Shown here: one piece after another, positions 5,257 through 23,702 of the stretch | How the letters are laid out: each line of letters begins with the position of its first letter | Position numbering within the stretch: position 1 is the stretch's first letter | Virus record (IMG/VR): IMGVR_UViG_3300042868_009074 | Span: 203,767-267,766 of that record | Direction: 5' to 3' (one strand) | Length of the DNA: 64,000 nt | Notes under the pieces: model-generated | Told to the model about the DNA's origin: nothing | Database searches by the model: none | What the model saw: the letters and a program-made list of their open reading frames with translations, nothing else | Program-made: the position numbers and the translations under genes

Positions 5257-6318
5257 ATGTCTATTCTAAATACACTTGTTAAGTCCTTCGACCCAGAAGG
5301 TTCACTTGGAATTGCAGTAGATTCACCCGAAATACTGCAGTCCACACCAAAAACAGCTAACTTAATCCTTGGCCGTCGTGTTCCATTTCAGGCTTCCTTT
5401 AATGGCAACATGCTTCCTGGTTTCGTTACCTTAAAATCTGCAAATCTCCAGCGTCTTAGCGTTGAAGATCACACTTCTGCAAATGGCACAAAGCCATTAG
5501 TATCAGGTATCTTTAACAACGTTCAAATGGACGTAGAAGTAATGATTGGAACTGAAATTATTAGCCTTCAAGAACTTCTTCTTGCAATGTCTAATGCTTC
5601 AGCTCAAAACCAAGTTACATTGGAAGAATTCATGCCTACACTCGAAAGCCTTGGCTTCCGTTTCAACTCAGGTATGACCTTCTTCTGGCAACAGTTTGGC
5701 TCTAATATCGATAGCTACAACGAACTTCGTGACTCATTCAAGTCACTTGGTGCAGTAAGTGGTCTCGGTACTAAGAACTTGCCTGCTAAAGTTAAAGAAG
5801 TTTGGGAAATGCCAAAGAACCTTACTGGTCCTGCAATTGTAGGCTTTGAAGTTAGCCGTGCAAAGCGCGAAGAATCTAAGACAGGTCAAGGTTTCCTTGA
5901 TTTCGTAGATGCCATTACAGCTAACTACAAGCGTATTGTAGATCTTCGTAAGACTTCAGCAGCTATGAAGAACGATATCACTACAAACTCTGTTGTAGAA
6001 GCATGGTCTCCTGAGAAAATTAAAGCCGTTGAAGAGCATGCAAATGCTTTGATGCGCATTTCTCAGAACTGGTCAAGCGTTTGGTCTGGTTCTTCTCAAG
6101 GTAAAGTTATCGACGAGAAAGATCCTTCTGTTATTGAACTTCAAGACCAGTGGTATGCAACCAAAGCTAACTGCGGACGTTTCTCTGTTGTCGTTAACGA
6201 CAAAGTAATGCCAGTTGATCTTTGGACAAACTCATTGCAAGCTAATACCTCAGGTAATACGACTGCATCTGCACCAGCTTCGGCTGTTGCTGGTGAAGCT
6301 CCAATTTCCTGGGAATAA
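5257..6318 (+). CDS. hypothetical protein, probably highly expressed
   Basis: 353-aa ORF with strong CGT/GGT/ACT-type codon bias. Confidence 0.85.
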   Translation: MSILNTLVKSFDPEGSLGIAVDSPEILQSTPKTANLILGRRVPFQASFNGNMLPGFVTLKSANLQRLSVEDHTSANGTKPLVSGIFNNVQMDVEVMIGTEIISLQELLLAMSNASAQNQVTLEEFMPTLESLGFRFNSGMTFFWQQFGSNIDSYNELRDSFKSLGAVSGLGTKNLPAKVKEVWEMPKNLTGPAIVGFEVSRAKREESKTGQGFLDFVDAITANYKRIVDLRKTSAAMKNDITTNSVVEAWSPEKIKAVEEHANALMRISQNWSSVWSGSSQGKVIDEKDPSVIELQDQWYATKANCGRFSVVVNDKVMPVDLWTNSLQANTSGNTTASAPASAVAGEAPISWE

Positions 6319-6461: not shown

Positions 6462-9005
6462 TTGGCCATTAACCCCAAAACAAGAACTATCTGCTATGCT
6501 GATGGACCTATTCGCTCTACAGGTGGATATCAAGTAGGTTTCTACGATATATCTCACCTTCGCCAGGCATTACAATATTCTGGCGAATCATTCTATCGGG
6601 TAGGCTCTTTGCCTATCCCACAAAACGAACATGAATTTACCCAAATTCAACAAATCATTAATGATCCTTCTATTCAGTATGCTCTAGTTGACAAGAACAA
6701 AATTGTTATCTGTCAAATTGGCAACAATACTGAATGGCTTAGTATCTTTACTGATATGGGTTATACTGTCCACGGTGGAGGCAAGACTGCTAAGCGGTTG
6801 AAGACTCTCCATCGACCTACTTTAATCAATGCTCACTTTGATCTTGATGAAATCAAAATACGCTATTGTGAAGCCGGCGACTTTAGTCGCTATTTCGATA
6901 GCGATGAAGAAGGCTATTGGCTTATAGATGCTGAAGACTATCAAGAATTTTATCAAAATCCTGAAGTTTGGGATCGACTCTTAGACGGTGGCTTTGCTAT
7001 CCATCCACGATTGATCCATAAAGGTATTGATAACCTACCTATCTTTGATCCCGCTGAAAACGAGGATCCAGGTGAGTACTATCTTAATCCTACTATGCGT
7101 ATGGATTGCATCCGTAATCTATATAATGCTAAAGTATTTAATATTAGACTTACTGGACCAATGGGTCAGCTTAAAGGCAACTGCTTTGTTACCGATAAAC
7201 TTCCTGAAGGTGTAGATGTATTGACTTGGCATGGAAATGTCAAGACAGAGATCTCATATTCTGAAGGCTATCAACTCATTGCTGAGCCTCAAGGACCTAA
7301 GTCCAAAGTCCGTACGGACGATCAAACTCTTATTAATATGCCACAACTCTTTACCAAGAGTGATATGGAATATTGGCTAGACGAGGAATATAAGAAACTC
7401 TTCAACGATGCCATCAACAATAAGCTTTTGATGAACTGGAAGAATGTATACCAACGTTCTTTCCGTGATGATACTAACCTTGAAGATGAAGAGTCTTATG
7501 CACGGTTTCAATATCAAGGTTATCGCTGGAAAGCAATGGGGATGAAGGTAACTGATTCCCCTTGGTTATTCCAGACCCTTGCTACTAGCCATGCTAAACC
7601 CCTTCAAGAACGTATCCCAATCCCTTGTTCTGTATCTGAACAGATTATTAGCGAGTCTATGGCTCGCTTATCTGGTTATGATGTAGAAGTCGAAGAAGGA
7701 ACTATTCAACGCATCAATGACCTTGGTGTACACGTAGTTAATGATCTCGATTGGATTGAGATGTATGAGAGCCATGGTGGCTGCGACGGTGACGACTTCT
7801 TTGGTTTATTCTATAGGACTCCAGTTGGTGGACAATATGATAAAGAAAAGGTTGTCTTTGCACGTCGATCTCCAAATGGTCTTGGTGAGTACTCTGTATT
7901 TAGATATGTAGAAGGACAATGGTCTCCAACTTGGTTGACCAGTGACGGTACTCAAGTTAAGTTTCCTGAGTGTTCTGGACGTGGTTGGCCTATGCGCCTA
8001 TCTACCGCCATTCACGCAGGGAAAGTTAGCTATGTAGGACTTCCTTCTTCTACTGCTCCTAAAGCTGAACGTACTGAAACCTATACTAGACAAGATGTCT
8101 TTAATGATATCCGATCTAGTATGACAGGTGGAGGCGTTGGCGGTTTCGTCAATGCTGTAATGCTACATACTTCTGTGTTCCATTCTCATCGTCCACTTCA
8201 ACTGTGTAGTTTGGAAGATGCAATCGACGGTTGCACTCAGACAAACGAACCAGCTGACCGTGAAGCGATTGAGCTTGAAGCTAAAGTATTGGTTGATGAA
8301 GTTATTAGTTCTGGACTTCCAGTAGACCGTTCATTATGGGATGCTAAGAAGTTTGACTACTATCTCAAGCCAGGCCAATTTGTAGAAAAGCACGAAGGTA
8401 AAATCACTCAGCTTAATATGATCACGAAAACTAAATATCGTGAGTATGTAAAGATGATTACCGAATGGGCTCAAAAGAACTGTCAACCTGATGAAGTTAT
8501 TCATAAGATTGGCTATCGCTTGAGCTTCAATGCTATTCCTATCTTAAAACAATTCCGTAAAGATATTTACAACTTGAATCAATCAGACATGAATGAATCT
8601 AGTGGTTATCTTGACAGCAGTAGCTGGGACTTCCTGTATCAATCAATCGTTGATAAGATTGAACTACATGACAATGAGTCTGATCGACACGATCTAGTAC
8701 TTGGTCTCTATTCTGCCAGCTTGAAGCACCCAACTTCAAATGGTAAAGTAAGTGACCAAATCGTATTCAATCGACATGTCTTTCCGTTCCTTGAACGAGC
8801 ACTCCAATATTATGGATTGGCTAACGTAGTTTCTTTCATTAGAAACAAAGATGGCACAGTCCGAGTAATGCAGAGCAAGACATCTGAATGGATTGGCATC
8901 GATGAAGATGGCAGTTATCATACCTTTGATGAAGCCATTGAATACCAAAGATTCCGTGGTAAGATTAGCCCTATTGTGTTTACCAACGCAAAGAAAACTG
9001 CTTAA
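6462..9005 (+). CDS. single-subunit two-barrel RNA polymerase-like protein (YonO/eukaryotic RdRP-like)
   Basis: Motifs LDGGFAI, FNIRLTGPMGQLKG and HGGCDGDD resemble the DG-G-I, IR-G-KG and DxDGD motifs of RdRP/YonO-type enzymes. Confidence 0.6.
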   Translation: MAINPKTRTICYADGPIRSTGGYQVGFYDISHLRQALQYSGESFYRVGSLPIPQNEHEFTQIQQIINDPSIQYALVDKNKIVICQIGNNTEWLSIFTDMGYTVHGGGKTAKRLKTLHRPTLINAHFDLDEIKIRYCEAGDFSRYFDSDEEGYWLIDAEDYQEFYQNPEVWDRLLDGGFAIHPRLIHKGIDNLPIFDPAENEDPGEYYLNPTMRMDCIRNLYNAKVFNIRLTGPMGQLKGNCFVTDKLPEGVDVLTWHGNVKTEISYSEGYQLIAEPQGPKSKVRTDDQTLINMPQLFTKSDMEYWLDEEYKKLFNDAINNKLLMNWKNVYQRSFRDDTNLEDEESYARFQYQGYRWKAMGMKVTDSPWLFQTLATSHAKPLQERIPIPCSVSEQIISESMARLSGYDVEVEEGTIQRINDLGVHVVNDLDWIEMYESHGGCDGDDFFGLFYRTPVGGQYDKEKVVFARRSPNGLGEYSVFRYVEGQWSPTWLTSDGTQVKFPECSGRGWPMRLSTAIHAGKVSYVGLPSSTAPKAERTETYTRQDVFNDIRSSMTGGGVGGFVNAVMLHTSVFHSHRPLQLCSLEDAIDGCTQTNEPADREAIELEAKVLVDEVISSGLPVDRSLWDAKKFDYYLKPGQFVEKHEGKITQLNMITKTKYREYVKMITEWAQKNCQPDEVIHKIGYRLSFNAIPILKQFRKDIYNLNQSDMNESSGYLDSSSWDFLYQSIVDKIELHDNESDRHDLVLGLYSASLKHPTSNGKVSDQIVFNRHVFPFLERALQYYGLANVVSFIRNKDGTVRVMQSKTSEWIGIDEDGSYHTFDEAIEYQRFRGKISPIVFTNAKKTA

Positions 9006-9014
9006 CAGTTTATG

Positions 9015-9062
9015 AACCCCCAGAGTATTAGCACGTTGCTAGTATTCTGGGGGTTTTTTTTC
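9015..9062 (+). terminator. intrinsic terminator
   Basis: CCCCAGAGTATTAGCA-CGT-TGCTAGTATTCTGGGG followed by a T tract. Confidence 0.85.
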
Positions 9063-9104
9063 TCACGCGGGCGAACGCGTACGAGGGTTAACACCAACTT
9101 ACAA

Positions 9105-9120
9105 TGTTCCACGTGAAACA
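9105..9120. promoter_or_regulatory. parS: parS centromere-like site
   Basis: TGTTCCACGTGAAACA matches the chromosomal parS consensus TGTTNCACGTGAAACA exactly; intergenic. Confidence 0.8.
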
Positions 9121-9144
9121 TCCGCTACCATAAAAAACAACGAA

Positions 9145-9271
9145 CTGTAGTCAGCTCTGCTGTCTCTAGGAAATAATCTTTGAGCACTTACCCTCCTTAG
9201 CTCAGATTAAAATCTCCCAGTGCCCCATCACCACTGTCCTAGAGATGGCAGAGTTGACTATGGTTTTTTTT
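9145..9271 (+). ncRNA. candidate sRNA: 27-bp closing stem, C-rich loops, T8 tail
   Basis: 9145-9171 pairs with 9237-9263 including several G-U pairs; inner hairpins TGAGC/GCTCA and CAGTG/CACTG. Confidence 0.55.
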
Positions 9272-9292
9272 AAACGAGAGGCACCAACTAAT

Positions 9293-9577
9293 ATGGCTGA
9301 TATTGATATCTCAAGTTATAACTTACAAGACCCTGCAGACATTGAGAAATTCTTCTTGGCTAACCACGCTGAGCTCATGTCTATGATGTCAGTGCTGTCT
9401 GAAAATGTTAGCACTATCCAAAATTATATTCTTGAATTAGATCTTTACACACTTCCAGAAGATACTGTTGTTAGTCTTTCTTCATTAATGGACGCTAACT
9501 TCAAAGTTCATGAAACCATCATAACTTTCTTTCAAGCTCTCATGCAAGTCTCTAAGATAGCTCCACGTCAAGATTAA
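9293..9577 (+). CDS. hypothetical protein
   Basis: GAGG RBS, ATG 9293; the track start at 9245 lies inside the RNA stem. Confidence 0.7.
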   Translation: MADIDISSYNLQDPADIEKFFLANHAELMSMMSVLSENVSTIQNYILELDLYTLPEDTVVSLSSLMDANFKVHETIITFFQALMQVSKIAPRQD

Positions 9578-9765
9578 TTTGTTAGACCATTGATTTTATA
9601 TACCTTCGAGGACATCATCACTATATATATTATATTATTTGTAATGATGTTCTTGATTTTATCAACTTTATTTGCTAAACTATTCCTATGTAACACAATT
9701 ATTTATATACCTTTATATGAATAAAAATCCATAAACAATCCCCGTTAACGGGAAAGGAAACCACA

Positions 9766-9990
9766 ATGCAAAAGAGAAATAAAACTCAACTCATAACACA
9801 ATACCTTGACCAGAACATTGGTAGTGAAGTTACTCCTCAGCAGATTGCTGATGCAGTAGAAACTACCATTCAAACAGTATACACTTTTATTCGTTCAAAT
9901 GCATCACGCTTTGAGTCAGTTAAGCGTGGTACTTTTAAAATTAATTCCTCACAAAACACCCTCTTTTTAAATAACGAGGGTACTATATAG
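9766..9990 (+). CDS. small helix-turn-helix DNA-binding protein
   Basis: VTPQQIADAVETTIQTVYTFIR HTH-like pattern; AAGGA RBS. Confidence 0.6.
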   Translation: MQKRNKTQLITQYLDQNIGSEVTPQQIADAVETTIQTVYTFIRSNASRFESVKRGTFKINSSQNTLFLNNEGTI

Positions 9991-9992
9991 AG

Positions 9993-10131
9993 GTTATCAA
10001 CAATTGATAACAGCGCAGTAATCTCGATAAATCGGCTTCATGCTAACCATTTGCTTTGTTAAGAGCGAATAAGTAAACTAAAAATCTACTTCTTTGTTTT
10101 AAAGTTATGGTTAGATATGAGGCCTTTTTTT
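9993..10131 (+). ncRNA. candidate cloverleaf-like sRNA with T tail
   Basis: GTTATCAA/TTGATAAC hairpin; GGCTTCAT/ATGAGGCC and CTAACCAT/ATGGTTAG stems enclose three hairpins; T7; TACTAT at 9981. Confidence 0.45.
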
Positions 10132-10177
10132 ATCTATTGCTTCCTGTTTTCAAAAGATTATTATTAAGGAATAGACT

Positions 10178-10336
10178 ATGGCTAAGAAAGATAGAACTCA
10201 ACAGCACCCTGTTGATGTAAATCTACTCACTAGGTCAATAGTCTTGGTTGCTCAAAAAATTGATCAACTTACCGAAGAAGTTCGTCTTCTTAGGCAAGAC
10301 CTTTCTAATAGTCCTAACAAGGAGGAATGTAGCTGA
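10178..10336 (+). CDS. small hypothetical protein (not in track)
   Basis: AAGGA RBS, 52-aa ORF. Confidence 0.5.
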   Translation: MAKKDRTQQHPVDVNLLTRSIVLVAQKIDQLTEEVRLLRQDLSNSPNKEECS

Positions 10337-10368
10337 ACACCAACTGGAACCACCCATATCCAATGTGT

Positions 10369-10570
10369 TATACTATATACATGCCCGTTGACAAGCGGGC
10401 AGGGAAACAATCCCTTACGTAACAGTTATACTGTGAAGTCGGAGAAGGCAAACCTGTCTTTTGTTGAACGGACAATTCGTTGTGTCCGGAACATTCGATT
10501 TCGCAACCTGCGCGATGCTAATGAAATCTGTTTTTAAGATTTCAAACCCAATCGAAAAGGAGCGAATAAA
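10369..10570 (+). promoter_or_regulatory. -10 box plus about 190-nt structured 5' leader of the Rpf gene
   Basis: TATACT 10369-10374; at least six hairpins before the AAGGAG RBS. Confidence 0.45.
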
Positions 10571-11446
10571 ATGCGCATACTACGAGTGATAATATTAATA
10601 TTAACAATGCTAGTAACATCTGTTGTTGTTAGCTCTGCTGCTGGTGCAGCAACTGGAGGCGTCTCGGAGCTTTCTTCCGAGCCCCGAAGTACCACCCTAC
10701 TCAGTACTCCTACTAAGTGGAAGTCCGTCGAATTTAAGATGGGACCTTCTATTAAGTACTGGACTAAAGTAGCCCAATGCGAGACTCGCCAGGACTGGCA
10801 AGACGGTGGCAACTGGGGTGGTGGACTTGGCATAGCTAAATCCACATGGCAAGGATATGGTGGCAAAGAGTTTGCATCTCATCCTTCCAAAGCGACTGTT
10901 CTTGAACAGATCGTAGTGGCTAACAGAATTGCAGTGTTTGGCTACCAAACAAAGAATGAGTTTATGACTGTCGAAGACAGAACTAATAACACACCATTCT
11001 TTAGACCAGCTGTTGGCTTTAATGGTTGGGGCTGTATTAAAAATAATACTTACCTCAAACCTAAAAAAGACACAGTTCTTAAAGTTAAACTTCCTGTAGG
11101 TAAAGAATTTTACTGTCCACAGTTTGAAGATACTTTTAAGAAGTATGCCCTGCCACACAAAGTGTTTTCTTATATCGCTTGGCGTGAATCTAGGTGTAAT
11201 CCTGGAGCCGTCAATGCTAAATGGGAAAACGGGCATATAGTCTGGACCCTCAACTCTAACGGTTCATACGACTCAGGTCTGCTCCAAATCAACTCTTCAT
11301 GGTTTAAAACATTAAGAGAACAATTTGGTTATGCCCCTGACGATCTAATGACACCAGCAGTCAATGCTTTATTCGCCAGTTGGATTCTCCACTTCTCTAG
11401 TGGCAGACTTAGAAACTGGAATGTTAAAGCTACTTCTGTACGCTAG
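10571..11446 (+). CDS. secreted Rpf-like plus SLT-like double lytic transglycosylase
   Basis: Signal peptide; Rpf domain YWTKVAQCE...GGLG...TW.GYGG..FA..PS.AT..EQI.VA; SLT domain IAWRESRC...DSGLLQIN. Confidence 0.85.
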   Translation: MRILRVIILILTMLVTSVVVSSAAGAATGGVSELSSEPRSTTLLSTPTKWKSVEFKMGPSIKYWTKVAQCETRQDWQDGGNWGGGLGIAKSTWQGYGGKEFASHPSKATVLEQIVVANRIAVFGYQTKNEFMTVEDRTNNTPFFRPAVGFNGWGCIKNNTYLKPKKDTVLKVKLPVGKEFYCPQFEDTFKKYALPHKVFSYIAWRESRCNPGAVNAKWENGHIVWTLNSNGSYDSGLLQINSSWFKTLREQFGYAPDDLMTPAVNALFASWILHFSSGRLRNWNVKATSVR

Positions 11447-11479: not shown

Positions 11480-11794
11480 ATGCAAAACACAAGAATCATT
11501 ACCCTTAATCATAAGGATATCCCTATGCCTAAAACTAACTACCTACCAGAAGAACTAGACTCTAAGTCTAAAATAAAAGAAATCATACTACAATACATTA
11601 TCGATGCCAATGTAGAAGAGTATGAATACGACGATGACGACGGCGACTGCTGTGACGATTGCTCGTATGAAGATGCTGACTGCAGCGACTGCTCATGTCA
11701 TTCTGATTTTCCTGGCTACGATGAACATCTTGCTGCCCTACTAGTAAGATTCATCTATAATAACTTTAAACTTCAAGAAACACCTAATGAATAA
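11480..11794 (+). CDS. hypothetical acidic Cys-rich protein
   Basis: DDDDGDCCDDC...CSDCSCH. Confidence 0.65.
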   Translation: MQNTRIITLNHKDIPMPKTNYLPEELDSKSKIKEIILQYIIDANVEEYEYDDDDGDCCDDCSYEDADCSDCSCHSDFPGYDEHLAALLVRFIYNNFKLQETPNE

Positions 11795-12542
11795 TCAAAT
11801 TAACTATGACCATGTTCACAATCAAGATCTAGCCCAATTAGATATTGAATCAGACACCCTTATGAGCGTAGATGTTGTGTCTATAATGTCACGCAAATTT
11901 AATTTTATTTCTCGTGGTTTTGATACTACAGAAATGGAAAACCTTGTATCTTTCTATTATGACATAGAAGACACACGGATCTCGTTGCTAGATCTCAATG
12001 ATTCTAAGAACTCATCTGTTTTTAAATCATATTCTCATTATCTAAGAGGATTAGAGAATTCTACTACTCCCATCTTTAGTGACTATAACCACTCCACTGT
12101 GACTGGTACCTGGGCTTTACAACAGCCTGGTATCGGACAAGCTGCCTCTGCTGCGTTGTTGTCTACGATAGATATTCACAAAGCTCCTAACTTTAATAAC
12201 TTATGGAGCTATTGTGGTCTTAATCCAAGTACTGCTCAACCAGGATCTTGGAACCCATTCTTAAAGAATCTTACTTGGAAGATCGGCAAATCTTTTGCTA
12301 CTGTTCCTGATTCCTTTTACGGTCAACTCTATACTAAAGAGCTTGACCGTAGAATCAAACAACGAGATGATTCAGGTGCTGACACAGAAGACTCCAGGCT
12401 AGAAGCTCAAGCTCGACGCTATGCAACTAAGATCTTCTTGTCTCACTGGCATCAGATCCGATACATAGAAGTTATTGGACAAGAGCCATCATCTTCATTC
12501 AAAAATTCTAGTTACATTGCCCCACCTAATAATCCTTATTGA
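11787..12542 (+). CDS. IS110 C-terminal/Nop-domain protein lacking RuvC (TasA-like)
   Basis: PGIGQ..SAALL..IDI..A.....LWSYCGLNP, WNP.LK.L.WKIG.SF and ARRYA.KIFLSH match the IS110/IS116 C-terminal fold; no DEDD domain. Confidence 0.65.
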   Translation: MNNQINYDHVHNQDLAQLDIESDTLMSVDVVSIMSRKFNFISRGFDTTEMENLVSFYYDIEDTRISLLDLNDSKNSSVFKSYSHYLRGLENSTTPIFSDYNHSTVTGTWALQQPGIGQAASAALLSTIDIHKAPNFNNLWSYCGLNPSTAQPGSWNPFLKNLTWKIGKSFATVPDSFYGQLYTKELDRRIKQRDDSGADTEDSRLEAQARRYATKIFLSHWHQIRYIEVIGQEPSSSFKNSSYIAPPNNPY

Positions 12543-12949: not shown

Positions 12950-13142
12950 TTAAGATTTCCTAGAGTACAAGTTCATTGAACTTATAATGCTTAGATGTAT
13001 TATGATTAAATGTGTGTGTTTATTGGGTACAAAGAAATAATCCTTTCTTGTGCTCTAGGATTAAAGTCTTAAGACCTGCTTAGTCATATGCAGGAGAATG
13101 ACCGACGCCAGCTCGGCTCACTAAATATGACAGCTGGCTTTT
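12950..13142 (+). ncRNA. candidate structured RNA with kissing hairpins
   Basis: 14-bp stem 12958-12971/13047-13060; loop GTCATAT (13083-13089) complementary to loop ATATGAC (13125-13131). Confidence 0.45.
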
Positions 13143-14864: not shown

Positions 14865-16544
14865 ATGACCGTTACCCTTAGACCCTACCAGCAAGAAGCT
14901 CTTGATGCTATCCTATTCCATGAAGGAAAAGGAATTAGTAAACAACTTGTAGTACTCCCTACTGGTGCCGGTAAAACAGTTTTGTTTTCTCATCTACCAG
15001 TTATTCGCAAGAACACTCTACCTATGCTCGTTCTTGCACATCGTGCAGAGCTATTAGAGCAGGCCCGCAATAAGATCATGGCATCTAACCCTACACTTAC
15101 TGTAGAGATAGAGCAAGCTGATCGTAAAGCTGGCCATGTAGACGTAGTGGTAGCTTCTGTAGCTACCTTAGGTCGTAGTGGCACACCCCGTATTGAAGGA
15201 TATCCTAATGACTATTTTAAGTCTATCGTTATTGACGAAGCCCACCATGCTGCTGCTCCTTCTTACAGAAGAATTGTTGATTACTTTAATCCTCCTTTTC
15301 TGTTGGGAGTTACGGCAACGCCGCAAAGGTCGGATTCGGTTAGACTCATTGATGTTTTCGATGAGATAGTTTACTATAAATCAATACAAGATCTCATTGA
15401 AGATGGCTGGCTTAGTCCCCTCATCGGATATAGAGTTAAAACAAATGTAGACATATCAGATGTCGAAATTAGAAACGGTGAATATGCTCAAGATCAACTC
15501 GAAGAAAAAGTGGATACTCCTGAGCGCAACGCTTTTGTTGTCGCTACCTATCGCAATTTGGCAATGGCTACGAAAGCCATTGTATTCGCATCCGGCGTTC
15601 GACACGCCGAAAACCTGGCCTTATCCTTTCGACAAGCGTCGGTAGAATGCGAAGTAATCGTGGGGACAACTCCTCACGAAGAACGTCAAAAGATCCTTCA
15701 GGATTTTTCTACGAATAAACTTAAAGTAATTGTCAATGTAGGTGTTCTCACCGAAGGTTTTGATGAACCCTCATTGGAAACAATTATCTTAGCTAAACCA
15801 ACCAGATCAACACTTCTGTATACTCAGATTGTTGGTCGAGGTACCCGTCTATTCGAAGGCAAAGAACATTGTACGATTATCGATATTGCAGACACCACGA
15901 GGGGGAAGAAGCCTATTGGCCTTCCTACTCTTTTGGGAATGCCACCAGAGTTCGATTTACAAGGACAGAGCCTAACAGACGTCGCTAAGAAGTATGAAGA
16001 GCTAGAAGACTATTGTCCTGGTGAAGCTATTCGTGTACTTAATCCAGATGATATTCAAGGTGCATACAAACGCATTAACTTGTTTATGCCACCACCACCA
16101 AACCCTGCTATCTTAGAATACTCTAAGTATGTATGGGCAGAGATCGGTGAAAACTCTTACCACCTAGGTCTTAATAATAATGAGTCCATGCATATAACAT
16201 TAGATGCTTTGGGTCGTTGGAATACTGAGCTTCATTATAAAGATAATGATAAAACTTCAGTTAAGATTATTGGTAGAGCTGATAATCTTAGATCAGTATT
16301 TTCCGGCACTGACAAATGGATTCAAGAGAATCGTGCAGCATCTTTAGTTCTAATCGATTCTTCTGCTCAATGGAGAACTGATGGACCTACTGATCCTCAA
16401 AAGAAAATGTTAAAGCGTTTAGGTATACCCCTTACTGCTGACATGACTAAAGGTATGGCTTCTCAAATCATATCTAAGTATTACGAAAACAATCCTAAGC
16501 CTAAATGGCTTCAAAATAAGATTGAATCTAAAAAACGTTGGTAG
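14865..16544 (+). CDS. superfamily 2 DExH helicase (Irc3/YejH-like)
   Basis: LRPYQ, PTGAGKT, DEAHH, TATPQR, VLTEGFD, QIVGRGTR. Confidence 0.92.
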   Translation: MTVTLRPYQQEALDAILFHEGKGISKQLVVLPTGAGKTVLFSHLPVIRKNTLPMLVLAHRAELLEQARNKIMASNPTLTVEIEQADRKAGHVDVVVASVATLGRSGTPRIEGYPNDYFKSIVIDEAHHAAAPSYRRIVDYFNPPFLLGVTATPQRSDSVRLIDVFDEIVYYKSIQDLIEDGWLSPLIGYRVKTNVDISDVEIRNGEYAQDQLEEKVDTPERNAFVVATYRNLAMATKAIVFASGVRHAENLALSFRQASVECEVIVGTTPHEERQKILQDFSTNKLKVIVNVGVLTEGFDEPSLETIILAKPTRSTLLYTQIVGRGTRLFEGKEHCTIIDIADTTRGKKPIGLPTLLGMPPEFDLQGQSLTDVAKKYEELEDYCPGEAIRVLNPDDIQGAYKRINLFMPPPPNPAILEYSKYVWAEIGENSYHLGLNNNESMHITLDALGRWNTELHYKDNDKTSVKIIGRADNLRSVFSGTDKWIQENRAASLVLIDSSAQWRTDGPTDPQKKMLKRLGIPLTADMTKGMASQIISKYYENNPKPKWLQNKIESKKRW

Positions 16545-16570
16545 TCAATACCACCTACGGAAACTATTCT

Positions 16571-18151
16571 ATGAACAATAAATTAACTAAATACATAACA
16601 GCATTAGTTATGTTAACTACGTTTACACTTACTAATGCTATTCCAGCCCAAGCTGCCCAAAACAAGGGCGGTTCAGAAATAACTAAACCCAATTCTAAAC
16701 CTAAGAAAAAGACTAACAAAAGAGTTAAGTCTCATTCTTATAAGAAAGTTGTAAAGACTAAGTCTAAAGTTGCTACTGCTAACTCTAAAGTTAAATTTAA
16801 ACTTTCTTTGTCCACAGCTATTCCTAAGATAGGTGCAGACTATTCTTATGATTCTGGTTATACTGGGCAAGGATCTTACGTTGTTGTCATTGATACCGGC
16901 GTAGAAAAAGCACATCCTTTCTTAGCCGATAAGATAGCTCTAGAAGCCTGCTTTGCTACTCGTTGCCCTAATGGTACCAATCAGATGATTGGACCAGGAG
17001 CAGCTGTCCCAGTGCATTATCACGGGACACACGTTGCTGGTATCATTGCTGGTAGCAACTCACAGTTTCATGGAATTGCCCCAGGTGCAAAGATCATAGC
17101 TATCAACATTTTTGACGTATATGGTGCAGCCTATGATGATGATATGGTTAAAGCTTTAAACTATGTCTACTCTTTAGCTGATACTTACAACATTACTTCA
17201 GTTAATATGTCACTTGGTGGTAACACTGTTTTTAGATCTACTTGCGATTCTTATCTTCCTGATGTTACTCAAGCTATTAACAATTTAAAGTCAAAGAATA
17301 TTGCTACAGTTATTGCTTCTGGAAACAATTATTCTGCTGGTATGTCAGCTCCTGCTTGTATCTCTACCGCCGTTAGCGTAGCTGCTACTTATACTTCTAC
17401 AGATAAAGTAACTACATTTTCTAACGTATCTCAGTTTACTACACTGTCGGCTCCTGGCTATGCCATTAACTCTTCTAAGTTGATGGGATCTTATGGTTCA
17501 GCTTCTGGTACCTCAATGGCAACTCCATTTGTTGCCGGAGCTTTAGCCGTGTACCGTTCCAAGTTTGGTGTCCAATCTGTAGATAAAGTTATTACTGACT
17601 TTCAATCTACTTCTTCGCCTGCTGTTGATGATTTCACTGGAATTATAACTAAGCGAATTAATATGAAGTCCTTGATTGATTCCACTACTACACCGGTTGT
17701 TCCTCCAGTAGTAACTACTACTACTATTCCAAATGCAACAACTACAACGTTACCTACTACAACAACTACTACTACTGTTCCGGTGACCACTACTACTGTC
17801 CCAGTAACTACAACCCTTCCTCCCGTTACTGGATATGCAGTAGGAAAACCATTGCTTGTTTCGTTAGACTCTATGTCGTCTGTCTATAACTCTTACCTCC
17901 ATGATGTATTCACGATTACATATCTTGATGTTTATTATGGCAAAGATGTTTTAACTCATTATCTATTGACTTGCGACAGTGGTCAAACGTTTACTATTCC
18001 AGTAGATTATACTGGCCGTTTAAACTATTATAGATTAAAGAATACAGATGGAACCTACGCTAAAGCTACAGGTATCATTAGGTGTTACCTGCAAGGTGCA
18101 GTAGGATCCTTTCTTGCTCCAAAATCTTGGTGGGAAGACGTCAATAGATGA
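16571..18151 (+). CDS. secreted subtilisin-like serine protease (S8) with Thr-rich linker
   Basis: Signal peptide; catalytic triad VIDTG, HGTHVAG, GTSMATP. Confidence 0.92.
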   Translation: MNNKLTKYITALVMLTTFTLTNAIPAQAAQNKGGSEITKPNSKPKKKTNKRVKSHSYKKVVKTKSKVATANSKVKFKLSLSTAIPKIGADYSYDSGYTGQGSYVVVIDTGVEKAHPFLADKIALEACFATRCPNGTNQMIGPGAAVPVHYHGTHVAGIIAGSNSQFHGIAPGAKIIAINIFDVYGAAYDDDMVKALNYVYSLADTYNITSVNMSLGGNTVFRSTCDSYLPDVTQAINNLKSKNIATVIASGNNYSAGMSAPACISTAVSVAATYTSTDKVTTFSNVSQFTTLSAPGYAINSSKLMGSYGSASGTSMATPFVAGALAVYRSKFGVQSVDKVITDFQSTSSPAVDDFTGIITKRINMKSLIDSTTTPVVPPVVTTTTIPNATTTTLPTTTTTTTVPVTTTTVPVTTTLPPVTGYAVGKPLLVSLDSMSSVYNSYLHDVFTITYLDVYYGKDVLTHYLLTCDSGQTFTIPVDYTGRLNYYRLKNTDGTYAKATGIIRCYLQGAVGSFLAPKSWWEDVNR

Positions 18152-18543
18152 AGACCTTGAAAGATGTTCATAAATCTTTTGATGATGATTTCTTTCAATC
18201 TATTCTAATACCTTTTGATTCTTATCCACAAGTTATTAAAGCTTCATTGAATGATGTTTTTAATTACGCTGGATTATCAGAAGAGAACTTATCTTTATTA
18301 ATATTAAAGAATAACCATTGTCTAATCTTTCATGAAGACCATGAAAGATCAATTAAAGAATCTAATATCCTAGCAACTTCTATATATAGAGACTACACTA
18401 ATACTTATTATATTAATGAAGTTATATATGGTAATGCTGTAATATTGGGTTACAACTCTATCTTAATACAAGACAACGAAAGATTTCATTCCATATCTAC
18501 TTTGTATATGAATGAAATTATTAACAGGTTTAATGTATTATGA
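18148..18543 (+). CDS. hypothetical protein
   Basis: 131-aa ORF with overlapping start. Confidence 0.65.
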   Translation: MKTLKDVHKSFDDDFFQSILIPFDSYPQVIKASLNDVFNYAGLSEENLSLLILKNNHCLIFHEDHERSIKESNILATSIYRDYTNTYYINEVIYGNAVILGYNSILIQDNERFHSISTLYMNEIINRFNVL

Positions 18544-18717
18544 AAAAAGATAGAAAATCTATTCACATTAAACAAATTAGATCTATACAAAACACATGTT
18601 CAGCATGTGGATTAAAATCCACTAAAGTTGAAAAGTCAATTAAGTTTAACAAATACTTTTGTATAGATTGTCTATTAGATTACATAAGAAATAATCTATA
18701 ATTAATAGGAGACATTT

Positions 18718-18960
18718 ATGTCAATTAACATTTTAGTCGGATCAGATCCCGACGATATCCCCCGCATCGTGGACACGATTGCAGCACTTGAATTCCTTCA
18801 TAATATCCTTCCACAACACCAATCTGTATTAGATTTAGAAGGTGGAGAATTTAATGGAGAAAAAGTAGAATATCTTATTGACTGGTATAAGTCAATGAAA
18901 GATGTTATACTTTATGCAGGAAACACCGAAGACGTAGTCTTAGAACCTAACCTCGTCTAA
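18718..18960 (+). CDS. hypothetical protein
   Basis: AGGAG RBS. Confidence 0.7.
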   Translation: MSINILVGSDPDDIPRIVDTIAALEFLHNILPQHQSVLDLEGGEFNGEKVEYLIDWYKSMKDVILYAGNTEDVVLEPNLV

Positions 18961-18965
18961 CATCT

Positions 18966-19049
18966 GCCCGAGTGGCGGAATAGGCAGACGCAGGGGGCTT
19001 AAACCCCCCGGAGGGCAACCTCTTACCGGTTCAAGTCCGGTCTCGGGTA
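18966..19049 (+). tRNA. tRNA-Leu(TAA)
   Basis: GCCCGAG/CTCGGGT acceptor, GGGGG-CTTAAAC-CCCCC anticodon arm, long variable arm, GGTTCAAGTCC. Confidence 0.95.
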
Positions 19050-19078
19050 CTATGCAATACACTATAATAAGGAAAAAA

Positions 19079-19552
19079 ATGAACGATATTTTACTAGACC
19101 CACCAACACCTCAAGCTCCTAAGCCAGGTGCAGGTATGAAACAAATGGGAATTATCATGGGACTAATTGCAGTTGTTGCATTACTCATTGGTATTCTTTT
19201 AGCATCTGGGAGTAAAACATCAGATTCTGTAGTTACCACACCGCCTGCCCCAGTGCAAACTTATGCTCCAGCTCCAGTTGTCAACAAGTATGAAGCTTAT
19301 CTTGACCATGTTTATAATAACTCTGGTCAAGCTAATACAATTACTAAAGCTTCTCTTATTGAATATGGAGATACTATTTGTTCTGCCTTAGATAATGGTA
19401 GAACAATTCCTTATATCGTAGGTTATCTTTCAAATAGTTCTTCTGGCGAAACCGATGCTGCTTTGTATGCTTCAGTAATCTTTGGAGCTATCACTTATAT
19501 TTGCGATGAATATAAAGGTGATCTTAACCTTTATCTTTCTAACTCCAATTAA
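19079..19552 (+). CDS. membrane-anchored DUF732-like protein
   Basis: TM helix, Pro-rich linker, YL...LI..G..IC.AL..G...AITYIC pattern typical of actinobacterial lipoproteins. Confidence 0.6.
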   Translation: MNDILLDPPTPQAPKPGAGMKQMGIIMGLIAVVALLIGILLASGSKTSDSVVTTPPAPVQTYAPAPVVNKYEAYLDHVYNNSGQANTITKASLIEYGDTICSALDNGRTIPYIVGYLSNSSSGETDAALYASVIFGAITYICDEYKGDLNLYLSNSN

Positions 19553-19570
19553 TATTTAAGGAAACATTTT

Positions 19571-20803
19571 ATGTCTATTCTAGTATCTGAACTAGATCTT
19601 CCTTATGTACCACCTAAACTTATTAAATCTGATTTAACAACTTATGATCAATTTAAAATTGGTTTAGAAGCTCATAAGCAAAACTGGATTGGCACAACAA
19701 AACTTTCTTATGTGATTTTAGACCACAAGCATTCTGCTGCTATGTTGAAAGACAAGAGATGGCACAATGGTTTGTATTTATTAAGCGAACTTAATCCTCA
19801 TTTTACTGAAGAGATTAAGATGAGTAGGAAAAAATTAATAATTAACTTAGAAGGCGAAGATCATTCAAGACTCAGAAAGATAATTGCTCCAGTTTTTTCA
19901 CCAAAGACAGCTGAGCTTCTTCGACCAGACATGCAAGATGCTATCAATCAAGTTCTTAATGATGTCATCGAAAGCGGTCAATGCGATTTGCAAAAAGATG
20001 TATTCAACAAGTATCCATCATACATTATCTCTAAGATAGTAGGAGTCCCCAATTCAGATTGGGAGAAGTTTAGTCAATGGGCTGATGATACCTTCAAAAC
20101 ATTTGGTGGAAACTTTGAACACCATAGCGAAGTTATATTAAATACTCAAAATGAATTAGATCAATATACTAATAATTTAATCATCAGCAAAAAAGAAAAC
20201 AAAGGCAATGACCTTGTTTCTATGTTAATTGACGCAGAATTTGATGGTCAAAAATTATCAGATCAAGAAATACAATCTCTTATCCAAGTAGTTCTGATGG
20301 CAGGCATGGATACGACTAGAGCACAGCTTGGTCTTATAGCAGTTATGCTATCTGAGAGACCAGATTTAATATCGATGTTAGCCAATGATTTAAATGTTGA
20401 AGATATAATAGAAGAGTCTACTCGCTTAGATTCTGTTTTTAAATATGTAATGAGAATTGCTTCAGAAGACATTGAATACAATGGAGTCTTATTCCCTAAG
20501 GGAACAATTATCTCCCCAGCATTGGGTGTTAATAATTACGATGACTTAGCTTTTGAAAACGCATCTGAATTTATTCTTGATCGTAAAGCAACAAAGGGCA
20601 TTACCCTGTCTTATGGTGGTGGAATTCATTACTGTCTCGGTGCTTCTTTAGCACGAGCTCAAATGCAGGAATGTATGAAAGTTGTTGCAAAAAGAATGCC
20701 AGATTATAAAATTACTGGAGAAGTTCTTTATAAAGAAGCTTACGAATCAGTAGTCGGTCCAAGATCTATCCCTGTGACTTTTACACCTAACATTAAGATT
20801 TGA
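19571..20803 (+). CDS. cytochrome P450
   Basis: H.RLRK, AGMDTT (I-helix), ESTR (ExxR), YGGGIHYCLG heme ligand. Confidence 0.95.
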   Translation: MSILVSELDLPYVPPKLIKSDLTTYDQFKIGLEAHKQNWIGTTKLSYVILDHKHSAAMLKDKRWHNGLYLLSELNPHFTEEIKMSRKKLIINLEGEDHSRLRKIIAPVFSPKTAELLRPDMQDAINQVLNDVIESGQCDLQKDVFNKYPSYIISKIVGVPNSDWEKFSQWADDTFKTFGGNFEHHSEVILNTQNELDQYTNNLIISKKENKGNDLVSMLIDAEFDGQKLSDQEIQSLIQVVLMAGMDTTRAQLGLIAVMLSERPDLISMLANDLNVEDIIEESTRLDSVFKYVMRIASEDIEYNGVLFPKGTIISPALGVNNYDDLAFENASEFILDRKATKGITLSYGGGIHYCLGASLARAQMQECMKVVAKRMPDYKITGEVLYKEAYESVVGPRSIPVTFTPNIKI

Positions 20804-20806
20804 TAT

Positions 20807-21019
20807 ATGGACAGTCAAATAATTAAAGCACAGATGTCTTCTCTTATTGGTAGAAGGATAGAACTTGTTGATTGCACTGATGAGTTCACCCCAATGACAC
20901 CTGGTACCAAAGGAACTATATCTTATATAGATGATATTGGTACAGTCTTTGTTGATTGGGATAACGGATCTGCATTAGGTCTTATCCCTGGAATAGATAA
21001 ATGGAAGTATATTAAATGA
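20807..21019 (+). CDS. DUF4314-like small beta protein
   Basis: GRRIELV...GTKGTI..IDD.G.V.V.WDNG..LGLIPG.D. Confidence 0.75.
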   Translation: MDSQIIKAQMSSLIGRRIELVDCTDEFTPMTPGTKGTISYIDDIGTVFVDWDNGSALGLIPGIDKWKYIK

Positions 21020-21312
21020 CTATTACATTTGGAACACGGTCACTCGAAGGAGTGACATTAGAACACAAAACATTAGAAGAATCATTAGAGGCTTTTATGG
21101 CTGCTGATGGTTATAGAATAGATTTCATGTTCCCAGATGGAAGATTTCTTTTTATTCATCGGGGAGAATATGGCGATGACATTCCTGAAGAAAAGTTAAA
21201 TCACCCTGCATGGAGGAACTACAAACAAGCTGTCTCTAAAGTTCTTGTTTATGATCCTCAAAATTTGCACAACAATAATGACAACGTAACTTACGTTGAT
21301 TTTTCTTCTTAA
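21016..21312 (+). CDS. hypothetical protein
   Basis: 98-aa ORF. Confidence 0.7.
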   Translation: MTITFGTRSLEGVTLEHKTLEESLEAFMAADGYRIDFMFPDGRFLFIHRGEYGDDIPEEKLNHPAWRNYKQAVSKVLVYDPQNLHNNNDNVTYVDFSS

Positions 21313-21315
21313 GAT

Positions 21316-21418
21316 TTTAGCTAGTAGCGTGTTCGATTTACTATTTGGAATTCGGAACGATATTAATAGTTACACACAGCACGTGGGCCTATATTCCCCG
21401 TAACTACTACTAGCTAGA
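21316..21418 (+). ncRNA. structured RNA unit 1 of a tandem pair
   Basis: TAGCTAGTAG/CTACTAGCTA closing stem stacked on TAGTTAC/GTAACTA. Confidence 0.55.
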
Positions 21419-21423
21419 TAAGT

Positions 21424-21539
21424 TTGATGGTAGCTGGTAAATTCCTACTAAGCGATTTTCGCAGAAATAAGCCGGTGTGAATTGCTAACTAAAAGTAACG
21501 ATACTAGTGGCCCCATATCGCCCCGTTACCTACCATCAA
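21424..21539 (+). ncRNA. structured RNA unit 2 of a tandem pair
   Basis: TTGATGGTAG/CTACCATCAA closing stem stacked on GTAAC/GTTAC; same loop motif as unit 1. Confidence 0.55.
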
Positions 21540-21791
21540 TTAATTTAAATTTAAAGGCAGTATTTTTTATGAACTTTTTTGCTATGACTATGTGCATATC
21601 AATTGTTGGTGGAACAATACTTTGCATTATATATGATGCTTATAAATATAAGGACTGAATATGATTCATTCTATTAAACAACTTATTATCCGTATTCGTT
21701 TTAAACGAACAGCTAGACAACGTCATAAATCATACAATAAAATGCATCAGACTCCTTATGGAGTTCCCACTAGAAATCAAGGATATTACGA

Positions 21792-21980
21792 ATGACTTAC
21801 ATTAAAATGCATGTTAAAGATAAGCTAGACATTATTGCTCATGTTTTAACTCGTAATGGCATTACTGTTTGGTATGGTATACCAGAACAGATAGTTGATG
21901 AACTTAAAGCTAATGGCTATAAGATAAAAAAGCGTAAGAATTTTAAAAACCTTACATCTAAGAATCAACCATACTTATAA
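21792..21980 (+). CDS. hypothetical protein
   Basis: 62-aa ORF in a chain of small genes. Confidence 0.55.
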   Translation: MTYIKMHVKDKLDIIAHVLTRNGITVWYGIPEQIVDELKANGYKIKKRKNFKNLTSKNQPYL

Positions 21981-22104
21981 TGATAGCTTATGTAATCATT
22001 GCTATTGGTTCTTTGTGGGGCATCTTAACTTTTATTGGGTTCCATGAAGAAGATAAAGAAATTAAAGAGATGATTGAATCTGCTCGCAAAGCAACTGAAA
22101 ACAA

Positions 22105-22177
22105 GCGCCTTTAGCTCAGTTGGTAGAGCAGTGGACTTTTAATCCATGTGTCCCGGGTTCGAACCCCGGAGGGCGCA
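22105..22177 (+). tRNA. tRNA-Lys(TTT)
   Basis: Canonical cloverleaf, GTGGA-CTTTTAA-TCCAT. Confidence 0.95.
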
Positions 22178-22445
22178 CTATTAAAGATGTGTCTGTACTA
22201 TATACAATACAAATCCAAAAGTTAGAGGGTAAACACAATGGAAGCAACTCCTAAACAACTAGCAACTAATCTCATAGATAAAGCTATTAAAGATATATCA
22301 GGTAGAGATCTTGTTTCCACCAATGAAATGACTGATCTTCTTCTTGATATTAGGCTTTATCTTCTGGCTCAAGAAGAGCCAGTCCCCCAGTAGATCTAAT
22401 CTATGCTATACTTAATAAATATTAGAAACAAATGAAAGATATATA

Positions 22446-22646: not shown

Positions 22647-22656
22647 TAAGGTAGTT

Positions 22657-22857: not shown

Positions 22858-22993
22858 TTGCTCTAGGCATTTTATTTCGGGAGCTTACAGTCCCCATTGT
22901 TACGGATCCCCACTCGTTTACGACTGGCCCGTCCACAAAGTGAATATACCAATCCACCTTTCTCCCCAGATAAGGTGGTCACAACTGTCCTAC

Positions 22994-23687: not shown

Positions 23688-23702
23688 TTAAGGAGAACCC
23701 AA

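What the first reader, a model, noticed from the sequence alone, without database searches (positions are those of the whole stretch)
9105..9120. Host-type parS site in a phage genome
TGTTCCACGTGAAACA is an exact match to the chromosomal parS consensus and lies in an intergenic gap right after the polymerase terminator. No parA or parB gene is in this window. Inference: the phage loads host ParB (and so SMC) to position or segregate its DNA, persist as a plasmid-like element, or titrate ParB from the host chromosome.
Basis: partly seen in the sequence, partly recalled or inferred. Interest (0 to 1): 0.72.

Follow-up and report, generated by a model that had tools for sequence, protein, structure and literature searches.

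The report
Orphan host-type parS in jumbo actinophage
A giant freshwater phage that probably infects actinobacteria keeps one perfect copy of the DNA site bound by the bacterial chromosome-partition protein ParB, has no ParB gene of its own, and shares the site with distant relatives, so it most likely recruits the host's chromosome-handling machinery onto its own DNA.

Summary
TGTTCCACGTGAAACA lies at window 9105-9120, in the gap after a terminator, and occurs once in the 267.8-kb virus record (6e-4 expected by chance).

It is also conserved. Twenty-two non-duplicate contigs from four clades of freshwater relatives (neighbour gene 53-91% identical), and two records of a fifth clade (46%), carry one such site in the same gene cassette. 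Flanking non-coding DNA is not conserved. Variation is almost entirely at positions 1, 5 and 12, the positions where parS is degenerate.

The site sits in different intergenic gaps of the cassette in different clades, so it is not tied to one promoter.

The record has no ParB, ParA, tubulin, integrase or resolvase. Three WhiB genes and an Rpf domain point to an actinobacterial host, whose ParB recognises this consensus.

Best reading: an orphan host-type parS that nucleates host ParB on phage DNA. The purpose (positioning or segregation, SMC loading, ParB titration, local regulation) is unresolved. The main rival binder is a conserved phage winged-helix protein 0.2-2 kb away. One lineage has lost the site.

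Unrelated large viral records without ParB carry 3-24 such sites. I found no paper describing this. Binding is untested.

The parts
9105..9120 (.). Single host-type parS site, TGTTCCACGTGAAACA. In most relatives it is flanked by A and T, giving an 18-bp near-palindrome.
   Evidence: Searches show an exact, unique match that chance does not explain. Searches show it is conserved in five clades, with variation at positions 1, 5 and 12.
9014..9062 (+). Intrinsic-terminator-like hairpin plus T-run that ends the upstream polymerase gene. It marks the 5' edge of the gap holding parS.
   Evidence: 20-pair stem, T-run. An equivalent hairpin is present in relatives.
6462..9005 (+). Syntenic anchor gene p847, a QDE-1/YonO-like two-barrel RNA polymerase homologue with an invariant H-G-G-x-D-x-D-D motif.
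   Evidence: Fold search: QDE-1 E 1e-6, RDR2, phage P74 gp62, P32 gp64 and P23-45 gp96. Atlas lead to PF05183. Invariant columns. About 50 homologues.
9142..9275 (+). Structured small RNA candidate directly downstream of parS. It has a long closing stem, hairpins with C-rich loops (ACCCUCC, CCCC) and a T-run.
   Evidence: -59.1 kcal/mol, z = -9.5; in the 62% clade, 53 pairs, 19 of them with compensatory changes. Homologues in the 53-57% and 46% clades. No Rfam match.
9293..9577 (+). p94, a small conserved ORF of the cassette, function unknown. In the 53-57% clades parS lies after this gene instead of before it.
   Evidence: tblastn synteny; no family.
9766..9990 (+). p74, a 74-aa winged-helix DNA-binding protein. 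It is conserved at 38-97% identity and always lies 0.2-2 kb downstream of the parS site. It is the rival candidate binder.
   Evidence: invariant recognition-helix residues; model pLDDT 79; generic winged helix, not ParB-like; linkage to the site; transcribed in lake metatranscriptomes.

Best explanation
The site is a genuine parS under selection, kept by a clade of roughly 200-270-kb freshwater actinophages that encode no ParB or ParA. The most likely mechanism is this. After injection, the host's chromosomal ParB dimer recognises the 16-bp site, binds CTP, closes into a clamp and slides out over several kilobases, building a partition complex on each phage genome. That complex links the phage DNA to whatever the host ParB normally engages: ParA and the polar DivIVA tether in actinobacteria, and the SMC/ScpAB loader. 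The phage chromosome would then be positioned or segregated, compacted, or both, during a long or carrier-type infection of a slow-growing host. What is shown: sequence identity with parS; single copy; selective conservation with a parS-like pattern of tolerated changes; no tie to one promoter; absence of phage parAB; actinobacterial host markers. What is inferred: that host ParB is the binder, that it spreads, and what benefit the phage gains.
For: 1. The site matches the consensus exactly and is unique in the record; 6.4e-4 matches are expected by chance.
2. It is conserved in 22 non-duplicate loci of the 91%, 62%, 54-57% and 53% clades, and in two records of the 46% clade. Adjacent intergenic DNA is unalignable between clades.
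3. The variants are TGTTCCACGTGAAACA, TGTTCCACGTGGAACA, TGTTTCACGTGAAACA and GGTT[T/C]CACGTG[A/G]AACA. Changes fall at outer position 1 and at positions 5 and 12, the degenerate N of the consensus and its mirror position. They are not compensatory: the window has C5 opposite A12. Selection is therefore on half-site sequence, not on a hairpin.
4. The site sits before the sRNA in the 100%, 91% and 62% clades, between p94 and p74 in the 53-57% clades, and about 2 kb upstream of p74 in the 46% clade. This suits a position-tolerant loading site rather than an operator.
5. The record has no ParB_N, HTH_ParB, TIGR00180 or AAA_31 ParA.
6. Three WhiB genes and an Rpf domain point to an actinobacterial host. 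Actinobacterial ParB uses this consensus (PMC7022226).
7. In C. glutamicum one parS is enough for ParB spreading over about 32 kb, for segregation and for SMC-dependent arm alignment (PMC7083940).
8. A parS engineered into a lytic phage recruits ParB foci in infected cells (PMC11946911).
9. Unrelated ParB-less viral records carry clusters of 3, 12 and 24 sites with the same set of variants.
Against: There is no binding or localisation data, and the host species is unknown. One lineage (G005/L130) has lost the canonical site: its half-sites are split by 11 bp, next to an inserted HNH gene, so the site is dispensable there. Three loci in two clades carry a G-to-A change in the CACGTG core (L150 and L151: CACATG; L158: CACGTA), which probably weakens ParB binding. 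A conserved phage winged-helix gene is always nearby and could be the real binder. Nothing in the genome independently indicates a plasmid-like or carrier state. No replication origin could be placed relative to the site. The 49% clade record G002 has no clean site in 60.9 kb.
Confidence: 0.55

Rival explanations
1. The palindrome is the operator of a phage-encoded DNA-binding protein, most plausibly the 74-aa winged-helix protein p74 (window 9766-9990), which regulates the sRNA-p94-p74 cassette. Its identity with parS would be convergence, or deliberate mimicry if the phage protein also occupies host parS sites and displaces ParB.
For: p74 is present in every clade and always lies 0.2-2 kb downstream of the site. 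Its predicted recognition helix has invariant residues (T34, Q36, Y39, R43, N45, R48), which fits a conserved DNA target. Its fold is a DNA-binding winged helix. In the 62% clade the site abuts the -35 element of the best promoter-like match, TTGACT-17-TACAAT.
Against: A match to a foreign 14-16-bp consensus at every specificity position, with changes only where parS itself is degenerate, is very unlikely for an unrelated winged helix (expected 6.4e-4 per genome). The distance to p74 and the intervening elements change between clades (200 nt to 2 kb, with a terminator, an sRNA and ORFs in between), which does not suit an autoregulatory operator. p74 has its own conserved upstream block (TTTGTAA[T/C]G plus TGCTATAAT) that could serve as its operator. 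G005 keeps p74 after losing the site. p74 is not ParB-like in fold. Promoter adjacency is absent in the window and in the 54-57% clade.
Confidence: 0.17
2. Host ParB does bind, but the benefit to the phage acts in trans or locally rather than on phage DNA handling. Either replicating phage genomes soak up ParB and so disturb host chromosome segregation or division, or ParB bound beside or on a promoter acts as a copy-number-sensitive repressor of the adjacent sRNA/p94/p74 genes.
For: ParB represses promoters next to high-affinity parS sites in P. aeruginosa (title and abstract of PMC5521831). In the 62% clade parS ends 1 nt before a strong -35/-10 match that would drive the sRNA. In the window the spacer is shortened, so a promoter would have to overlap the site. 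In the unrelated record G028, 24 sites lie just 5' of many gene starts, which looks regulatory. Phage replication would multiply the site to well above the host's few copies.
Against: The site is not held at a fixed distance from any promoter across clades. A sponge would be expected to use many sites per genome, as G028 and G013 do, not one. Nothing is known about the timing of transcription; the metatranscriptome contigs do not cover 8438-9509.
Confidence: 0.2
3. The match has no function: a chance palindrome, a hairpin or terminator element, or a relic of captured host DNA.
For: The scan tool flags the palindrome as a weak minus-strand terminator-like hairpin in two relatives. At least 119 IMG/VR stretches contain the exact 16-mer, and some of those must be chance.
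Against: It is conserved across clades whose neighbour protein is only 46-62% identical, while flanks diverge. The stem is not preserved by compensation (C5 opposite A12 in the window). There is no T-run in the window. All neighbouring genes are on the + strand. No host-like genes flank it.
Confidence: 0.03

Closest known systems
Chromosomal ParABS centromere parS (B. subtilis Spo0J/ParB site; C. glutamicum, Mycobacterium, Streptomyces parS)
   Same: The 16-bp sequence is identical (consensus TGTTNCACGTGAAACA, PMC7022226). The same positions are degenerate. A single site is known to be enough for ParB spreading and SMC loading in an actinobacterium (PMC7083940).
   Different: It is carried by a virus, not a chromosome. 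There is no parAB operon on the same replicon. It is a single copy. Its position relative to a replication origin is unknown.
Self-encoded partition cassettes of plasmid prophages (P1 parABS, N15 sopABC, extrachromosomal mycobacteriophage prophages, PMC7157519)
   Same: A phage genome carries a centromere-like site that would let it be handled like a low-copy replicon.
   Different: Those elements encode their own ParA and ParB and use element-specific, usually repeated, sites (background knowledge; only the title and abstract of PMC7157519 were seen). Here no partition proteins are encoded, and the site is the host chromosome's own consensus, so the element would depend on host proteins.
KorB-OB operators of plasmid RK2 (a ParB-family CTP clamp used as a transcription regulator)
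   Same: A ParB-family palindromic site placed immediately upstream of a -35 element, as in the 62% clade, could repress transcription.
   Different: KorB is plasmid-encoded, and its OB sites are many and differ in sequence (background knowledge). Here promoter adjacency is specific to one clade.
Engineered parS tags in phage genomes for ParB-fluorescent-protein imaging (e.g. Bas54::parS, PMC11946911)
   Same: They show experimentally that a parS insert in a lytic phage genome nucleates ParB foci on phage DNA inside infected cells.
   Different: They are artificial, use the P1 parS with its cognate ParB supplied in trans, and confer no benefit on the phage.

Membership tests
Chromosomal-type parS (ParB/Spo0J binding site) | Match to the 16-bp consensus TGTTNCACGTGAAACA | tested here: met
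   16 of 16 at window 9105-9120. Consensus as given in PMC7022226.
Chromosomal-type parS (ParB/Spo0J binding site) | Conserved under selection, with changes only at positions that ParB tolerates | tested here: met
   Present in five clades. Variants differ at positions 1, 5 and 12. Three loci in two clades have a core G-to-A change, and one lineage has lost the site.
Chromosomal-type parS (ParB/Spo0J binding site) | Bound by ParB, which nucleates a CTP-dependent sliding clamp and spreads | not testable with these tools
Chromosomal-type parS (ParB/Spo0J binding site) | A cognate ParB is available in the same cell | tested here: inconclusive
   None is phage-encoded. The host is inferred to be actinobacterial from three WhiB genes and an Rpf domain, a phylum whose model species have ParB. 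The host species itself was not identified; the genome-contig scan gave only one mis-binned hit.
Chromosomal-type parS (ParB/Spo0J binding site) | Origin-proximal location | tested here: inconclusive
   GC skew gives no origin signal. The site lies about 13-18 kb inside the + strand gene block that starts at a divergent strand switch around 195-199 kb of the record.
Self-contained type Ia partition cassette (parA-parB-parS of plasmids and plasmid prophages) | parA and parB genes on the same element, next to the site | tested here: not met
   No ParB_N, HTH_ParB, TIGR00180 or AAA_31 anywhere in the 267.8 kb. No tubulin-type segregation NTPase either.
Self-contained type Ia partition cassette (parA-parB-parS of plasmids and plasmid prophages) | Clustered or iterated centromere repeats | tested here: not met
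   One copy per record in G000, G001, G003 and G006.
Promoter operator of a ParB-family regulator (KorB-OB type) | Fixed position relative to a promoter | tested here: not met
   The site abuts a strong -35/-10 match only in the 62% clade. There is none in the window or in L146. The site changes intergenic gap between clades.
Intrinsic terminator or structural hairpin | Stem kept by compensatory changes, followed by a T-run | tested here: not met
   Positions 5 and 12 vary independently (C5 opposite A12 in the window). There is no T-run on either strand in the window.

The most novel reading that the evidence does not exclude
Carrying 'orphan' copies of the host chromosome's parS is a general and so far undescribed phage strategy for recruiting the host ParB-CTP clamp, and through it ParA, DivIVA or SMC. 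This clade of jumbo actinophages uses one site. Unrelated large viral genomes without ParB use clusters of 3-24 sites (G009, G013, G028), some placed at gene starts, as centromeres, ParB sponges or ParB-dependent switches.
Probability: 0.35. Interest if true: 0.85.

Novelty: new variant of a known kind. Interest (0 to 1): 0.72.

Why it matters
ParB-parS-SMC is the core chromosome-organising system of most bacteria. Phages are known to bring their own partition systems, but I found no description of phages depending on the host's system through a bare parS.

If host ParB loads on these genomes, that gives a new class of host-factor dependency for large phages. It would offer a natural system to ask what ParB and SMC do to a foreign 200-kb DNA molecule. 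It could explain how non-integrating giant phages persist in slow-growing freshwater actinobacteria. It would also supply a simple sequence marker (orphan parS) for host prediction and for finding carrier-state phages in metagenomes.

It can be tested directly with three oligonucleotides, one purified ParB and CTP.

Tried and rejected
- **Megablast against isolated phages:** window 8000-10500 gave no match.
- **Rfam:** the gap and five relatives' loci gave nothing above noise, and no 6C RNA.
- **Sequence annotation of p847:** Pfam, PHROGs, NCBIfam and PDB sequence searches gave nothing. Only the fold search resolved it.
- **Host identification:** a genome-contig scan with the phage WhiB alignment returned a single 3-kb contig in a 'Bacteroidales' MAG, probably a mis-binned phage fragment. 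'Relatives' are not available for a virus record. Host parS variants could therefore not be compared.
- **Complex prediction:** the job with a p74 dimer plus the 28-bp site was not folded, so it is no evidence either way.
- **Shared exact k-mers between clades:** uninformative, because the variants differ at the N positions.
- **GC skew:** no origin signal.
- **Metatranscriptome contigs:** they cover p847 and p74 but not the parS/sRNA stretch.
- **TIGR array near the Tas-like gene:** tandem and direct repeat searches found none.
- **WhiB in 50 other parS-bearing viral records:** none found, so orphan parS is not an actinophage-specific marker.
- **Rejected idea, promoter of the phage's own RNA polymerase:** the site is single-copy.
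- **Rejected idea, tubR/tubC-type system:** no tubulin gene is present.

Full report
**1. The observation**

TGTTCCACGTGAAACA is at window 9105-9120. It matches the chromosomal parS consensus TGTTNCACGTGAAACA exactly; that consensus is listed for Bacillus subtilis and Corynebacterium glutamicum in the review PMC7022226.

The window is the last 64 kb of a 267,766-bp IMG/VR virus record (G000, GC about 37%, CheckV 100%). The site occurs once in the whole record, and the next-best matches have 2-3 mismatches. From the record's base composition, 6.4e-4 exact matches are expected.

The site lies in a 287-nt non-coding gap. The upstream 847-codon ORF stops at 9005, a 20-pair hairpin with a T-run follows at 9014-9062, and the next ORF most plausibly starts at 9293.

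**2. The neighbourhood**

The upstream gene (p847) has no Pfam, PHROG, NCBIfam or PDB sequence match. An AlphaFold model built on 15 homologues (pLDDT 64.5) matches these structures:
- QDE-1, E 1e-6, probability 1.0
- plant RDR2
- the single-subunit two-barrel RNA polymerases of phages P74, P32, P23-45 and crAss-like phi14:2

This agrees with an Atlas lead to PF05183. An H-G-G-x-D-x-D-D motif is invariant.

Downstream of parS lie, in order:
- a strongly structured small RNA candidate (9142-9275; -59 kcal/mol, z = -9.5; 19 of 53 pairs covary in the 62% clade)
- p94 (9293-9577)
- a 74-aa winged-helix protein, p74 (9766-9990)
- an Rpf+SLT transglycosylase (10571-11446)
- a TIGR-Tas-like protein (11787-12542)

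**3. Conservation**

Searches with p847 found about 50 homologous loci in viral and freshwater-lake metagenome contigs, at 100, 91, 61-63, 53-57 and 45-49% amino-acid identity. Every locus of the 53-100% clades with enough downstream sequence carries one parS-like site, except one contig. That makes 22 non-duplicate loci.

| Variant | Loci | Clades |
|---|---|---|
| TGTTCCACGTGAAACA | 3 | 100%, 91%, one 61% |
| TGTTCCACGTGGAACA | 10 | 62%, 55-56% |
| TGTTTCACGTGAAACA (perfect canonical palindrome) | 2 | 62% |
| GGTT[T/C]CACGTG[A/G]AACA | 4 | 53% |
| TGTTCCACATGGAACA | 2 | 54-57% |
| GGTTCCACGTAGAACA | 1 | 53% |

In the 46% clade, two viral records (81 and 57 kb) each hold exactly one TGTTCCACGTGAAACA. 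It is again intergenic, about 4.8 kb upstream of p847.

Flanking non-coding DNA is not alignable between clades. The core pattern GTTNCACGTGNAAC is expected 3.8e-4 times per 10 kb.

Changes fall almost entirely at outer position 1 and at positions 5 and 12, the degenerate N of the consensus and its mirror position. They are not compensatory: the window pairs C5 with A12. What is kept is the half-site sequence GTT[C/T]CAC, as expected for a protein site and not for a hairpin.

**4. Position**

Synteny mapping gives three arrangements:
- 100%, 91% and 62% clades: RNAP - terminator - parS - sRNA - p94 - p74
- 53-57% clades: RNAP - sRNA - (ORFs) - p94 - parS - p74
- 46% clade: HicA-like - parS - ORFs - sRNA - p94-like - p74 - Rpf - ... 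- RNAP

The site stays inside one cassette but sits in different gaps. In the 62% clade it ends 1 nt before a strong TTGACT-17-TACAAT match that would drive the sRNA. In the window and the 54-57% clade there is no such promoter. This argues for a position-tolerant cis site rather than an operator fixed to one promoter.

**5. What could bind it**

Six-frame HMM searches of the whole record found none of the following, while control genomes scored:
- ParB_N, HTH_ParB, TIGR00180
- AAA_31 (ParA)
- tubulin
- tyrosine integrase, serine resolvase

The record has three WhiB genes and an Rpf domain, both hallmarks of actinobacteria and their phages. The relatives come from lake metagenomes, and whiB-encoding freshwater actinophages, including huge ones, are described in PMC10914622.

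Actinobacterial ParB uses this consensus. In C. glutamicum a single parS supports ParB spreading over about 32 kb, normal segregation and SMC-dependent arm alignment (PMC7083940). A P1 parS engineered into a lytic coliphage recruits ParB foci on phage DNA in infected cells (PMC11946911). Host ParB is therefore the most economical binder.

**6. The rival binder**

The only serious rival is p74. It is present in all clades, always 0.2-2 kb downstream of the site, and has invariant recognition-helix residues.

Four points count against it:
- its fold is a generic winged helix, not ParB-like
- its distance from the site and the intervening elements vary
- it has its own conserved upstream block
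- it is retained in the one lineage that lost the site

The complex-prediction tool did not fold the protein-DNA job, so there is no evidence from that source.

**7. Natural loss**

Contig G005 (= L130/L144, 62% clade) has an HNH-endonuclease-like ORF inserted on the minus strand. At the expected place it reads GGTTCCAC-tatgttctata-TGGAACC, that is, half-sites split by 11 bp with no CACGTG core. The site is therefore dispensable in at least one lineage. Three loci in two clades have a G-to-A change in the core (L150, L151, L158). The 49% clade record G002 shows only a doubtful one-mismatch hit.

**8. Function**

I commit to ParB nucleation on phage DNA, with probability about 0.75 that host ParB binds at all. 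The favoured use is in cis: positioning or segregation through ParA/DivIVA, and/or SMC loading to compact and resolve a genome of more than 200 kb. I give this 0.55.

Alternatives that also depend on ParB are titration of ParB from the host chromosome and copy-number-dependent control of the adjacent sRNA/p94/p74 genes (0.2). ParB is known to repress promoters beside parS in P. aeruginosa (title and abstract of PMC5521831). The data do not separate these uses. A single site fits nucleation better than a sponge.

**9. Wider pattern**

The exact 16-mer occurs in at least 119 IMG/VR stretches; some of these will be chance. Of 50 such records, only 2 encode ParB_N and none encodes WhiB. Three ParB-less, near-complete records carry clusters that cannot be chance:
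- G028 (116.7 kb, locus GC 65%): 24 sites, many just 5' of gene starts
- G013 (169 kb): 12 sites at the record ends, including the TGTTCCACGTGGAACA variant alongside canonical ones
- G009 (77 kb): 3 sites

This supports the double-C variant as a bona fide parS and suggests that orphan host-type parS is recurrent. Seven literature searches found no paper describing natural host-type parS in phages lacking parB. The library lacks most subscription journals.

**10. Caveat on the record**

G000:1-51 kb is a colinear, diverged paralogue (25-94% aa identity, 41 gene pairs) of G000:208-267.6 kb, including a second two-barrel RNAP. In relatives the order is module, then minus-strand block, then module. 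The true genome is therefore probably about 207-217 kb and circularly permuted, and the record may be a join of two related phages. The copy at the left end starts just past the place where its own parS would be, so 'one site per genome' rests on G001, G003 and G006 as well as on G000.

**11. Verdict**

This is a new variant of a known kind, a chromosomal-type parS used as an orphan by a virus. Interest is 0.72.

Noticed in passing
window 9142-9275 (homologues: L132 5846-6040, L146 about 5850-6010, G001 about 8280-8440): A conserved, terminator-ended small RNA candidate. It has a long closing stem and two or three hairpins whose loops are C-rich (ACCCUCC, UACCCCCCGA), resembling anti-Shine-Dalgarno sequence or actinobacterial 6C RNA. 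MFE z-score is -9.5, and 19 of 53 pairs covary. It has no Rfam family.
   Followed up: partly
window 11787-12542: A 251-aa protein matches NCBIfam NF052498, 'TIGR-Tas system RNA-guided endonuclease' (E 5e-26, 92 bits, cut-off 100), and Pfam Transposase_20. It is conserved in the 62% clade. No tandem guide array was found within a few kb.
   Followed up: partly
G000:1-51,000 versus G000:208,000-267,641 (the window is G000:203,767-267,766): The two ends of the 267.8-kb record are colinear diverged copies of one roughly 50-60-kb module (41 protein pairs, 25-94% identity). The record is probably more than one genome length, or a chimera of two related phages. The true genome is probably about 207-217 kb.
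   Followed up: partly
window 6462-9005; paralogue at G000:1543-4074: p847 is a QDE-1/YonO-like two-barrel RNA polymerase that sequence-family libraries do not detect (fold hits E 1e-6; invariant HGGxDxDD motif). The record holds two diverged copies.
   Followed up: yes
IMG/VR records G028 (L058), G013 (L023), G009 (L014): Unrelated, near-complete viral records without ParB_N or WhiB carry 24, 12 and 3 host-type parS sites. In G028 (locus GC 65%) many sites are preceded by 'tcga' and lie just upstream of minus-strand gene starts.
   Followed up: partly
L040, L061, L072, L048, L026, L011, L080, L062 (IMG/VR contigs of about 7-12 kb): Small elements carry one or two exact parS copies near the contig ends. 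In most of them paired copies are 42 bp apart, and in several they sit at both ends in inverted orientation; two of the records are classed as having inverted terminal repeats.
   Followed up: no
L199 15881-16340 (= G005 35881-36340): An HNH-endonuclease-like ORF (133 aa, minus strand) is inserted exactly where relatives have parS. The site is replaced by GGTTCCAC-tatgttctata-TGGAACC.
   Followed up: partly
L132 about 5570-5690, L146 about 5590-5680, L152 about 5630-5720; shortened in window 9063-9095: A second conserved non-coding block lies between the RNAP terminator and the parS/sRNA in the 53-62% clades (…GCCTTAGGGAnTGAAGCAGAAAA…GAGATnACGAACGAGnGTCCTGCnGAACG…). It may be another RNA or a regulatory element.
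   Followed up: no
window 12958-13060: An inverted repeat TCCTAGAGTACAAG / CTTGTGCTCTAGGA, 75 nt apart, reuses the CTCTAGGA/TCCTAGAG closing-stem motif of the sRNA. It may be a second member of the same RNA type.
   Followed up: no
window 14865-34141 and 25101-25508: The gene content includes a ResIII/DEAD helicase, a subtilase, a cytochrome P450, a JAB + ThiF (E1-like) + AAA ATPase trio suggesting a ubiquitin- or Pup-like system, a WhiB gene and six tRNAs.
   Followed up: no
window 9622-10180: Lake metatranscriptome contigs at 99% or higher identity (run X18) start at about 9622 and cover p74 and the following spacer. p74 is therefore expressed in situ, probably from its own promoter.
   Followed up: partly
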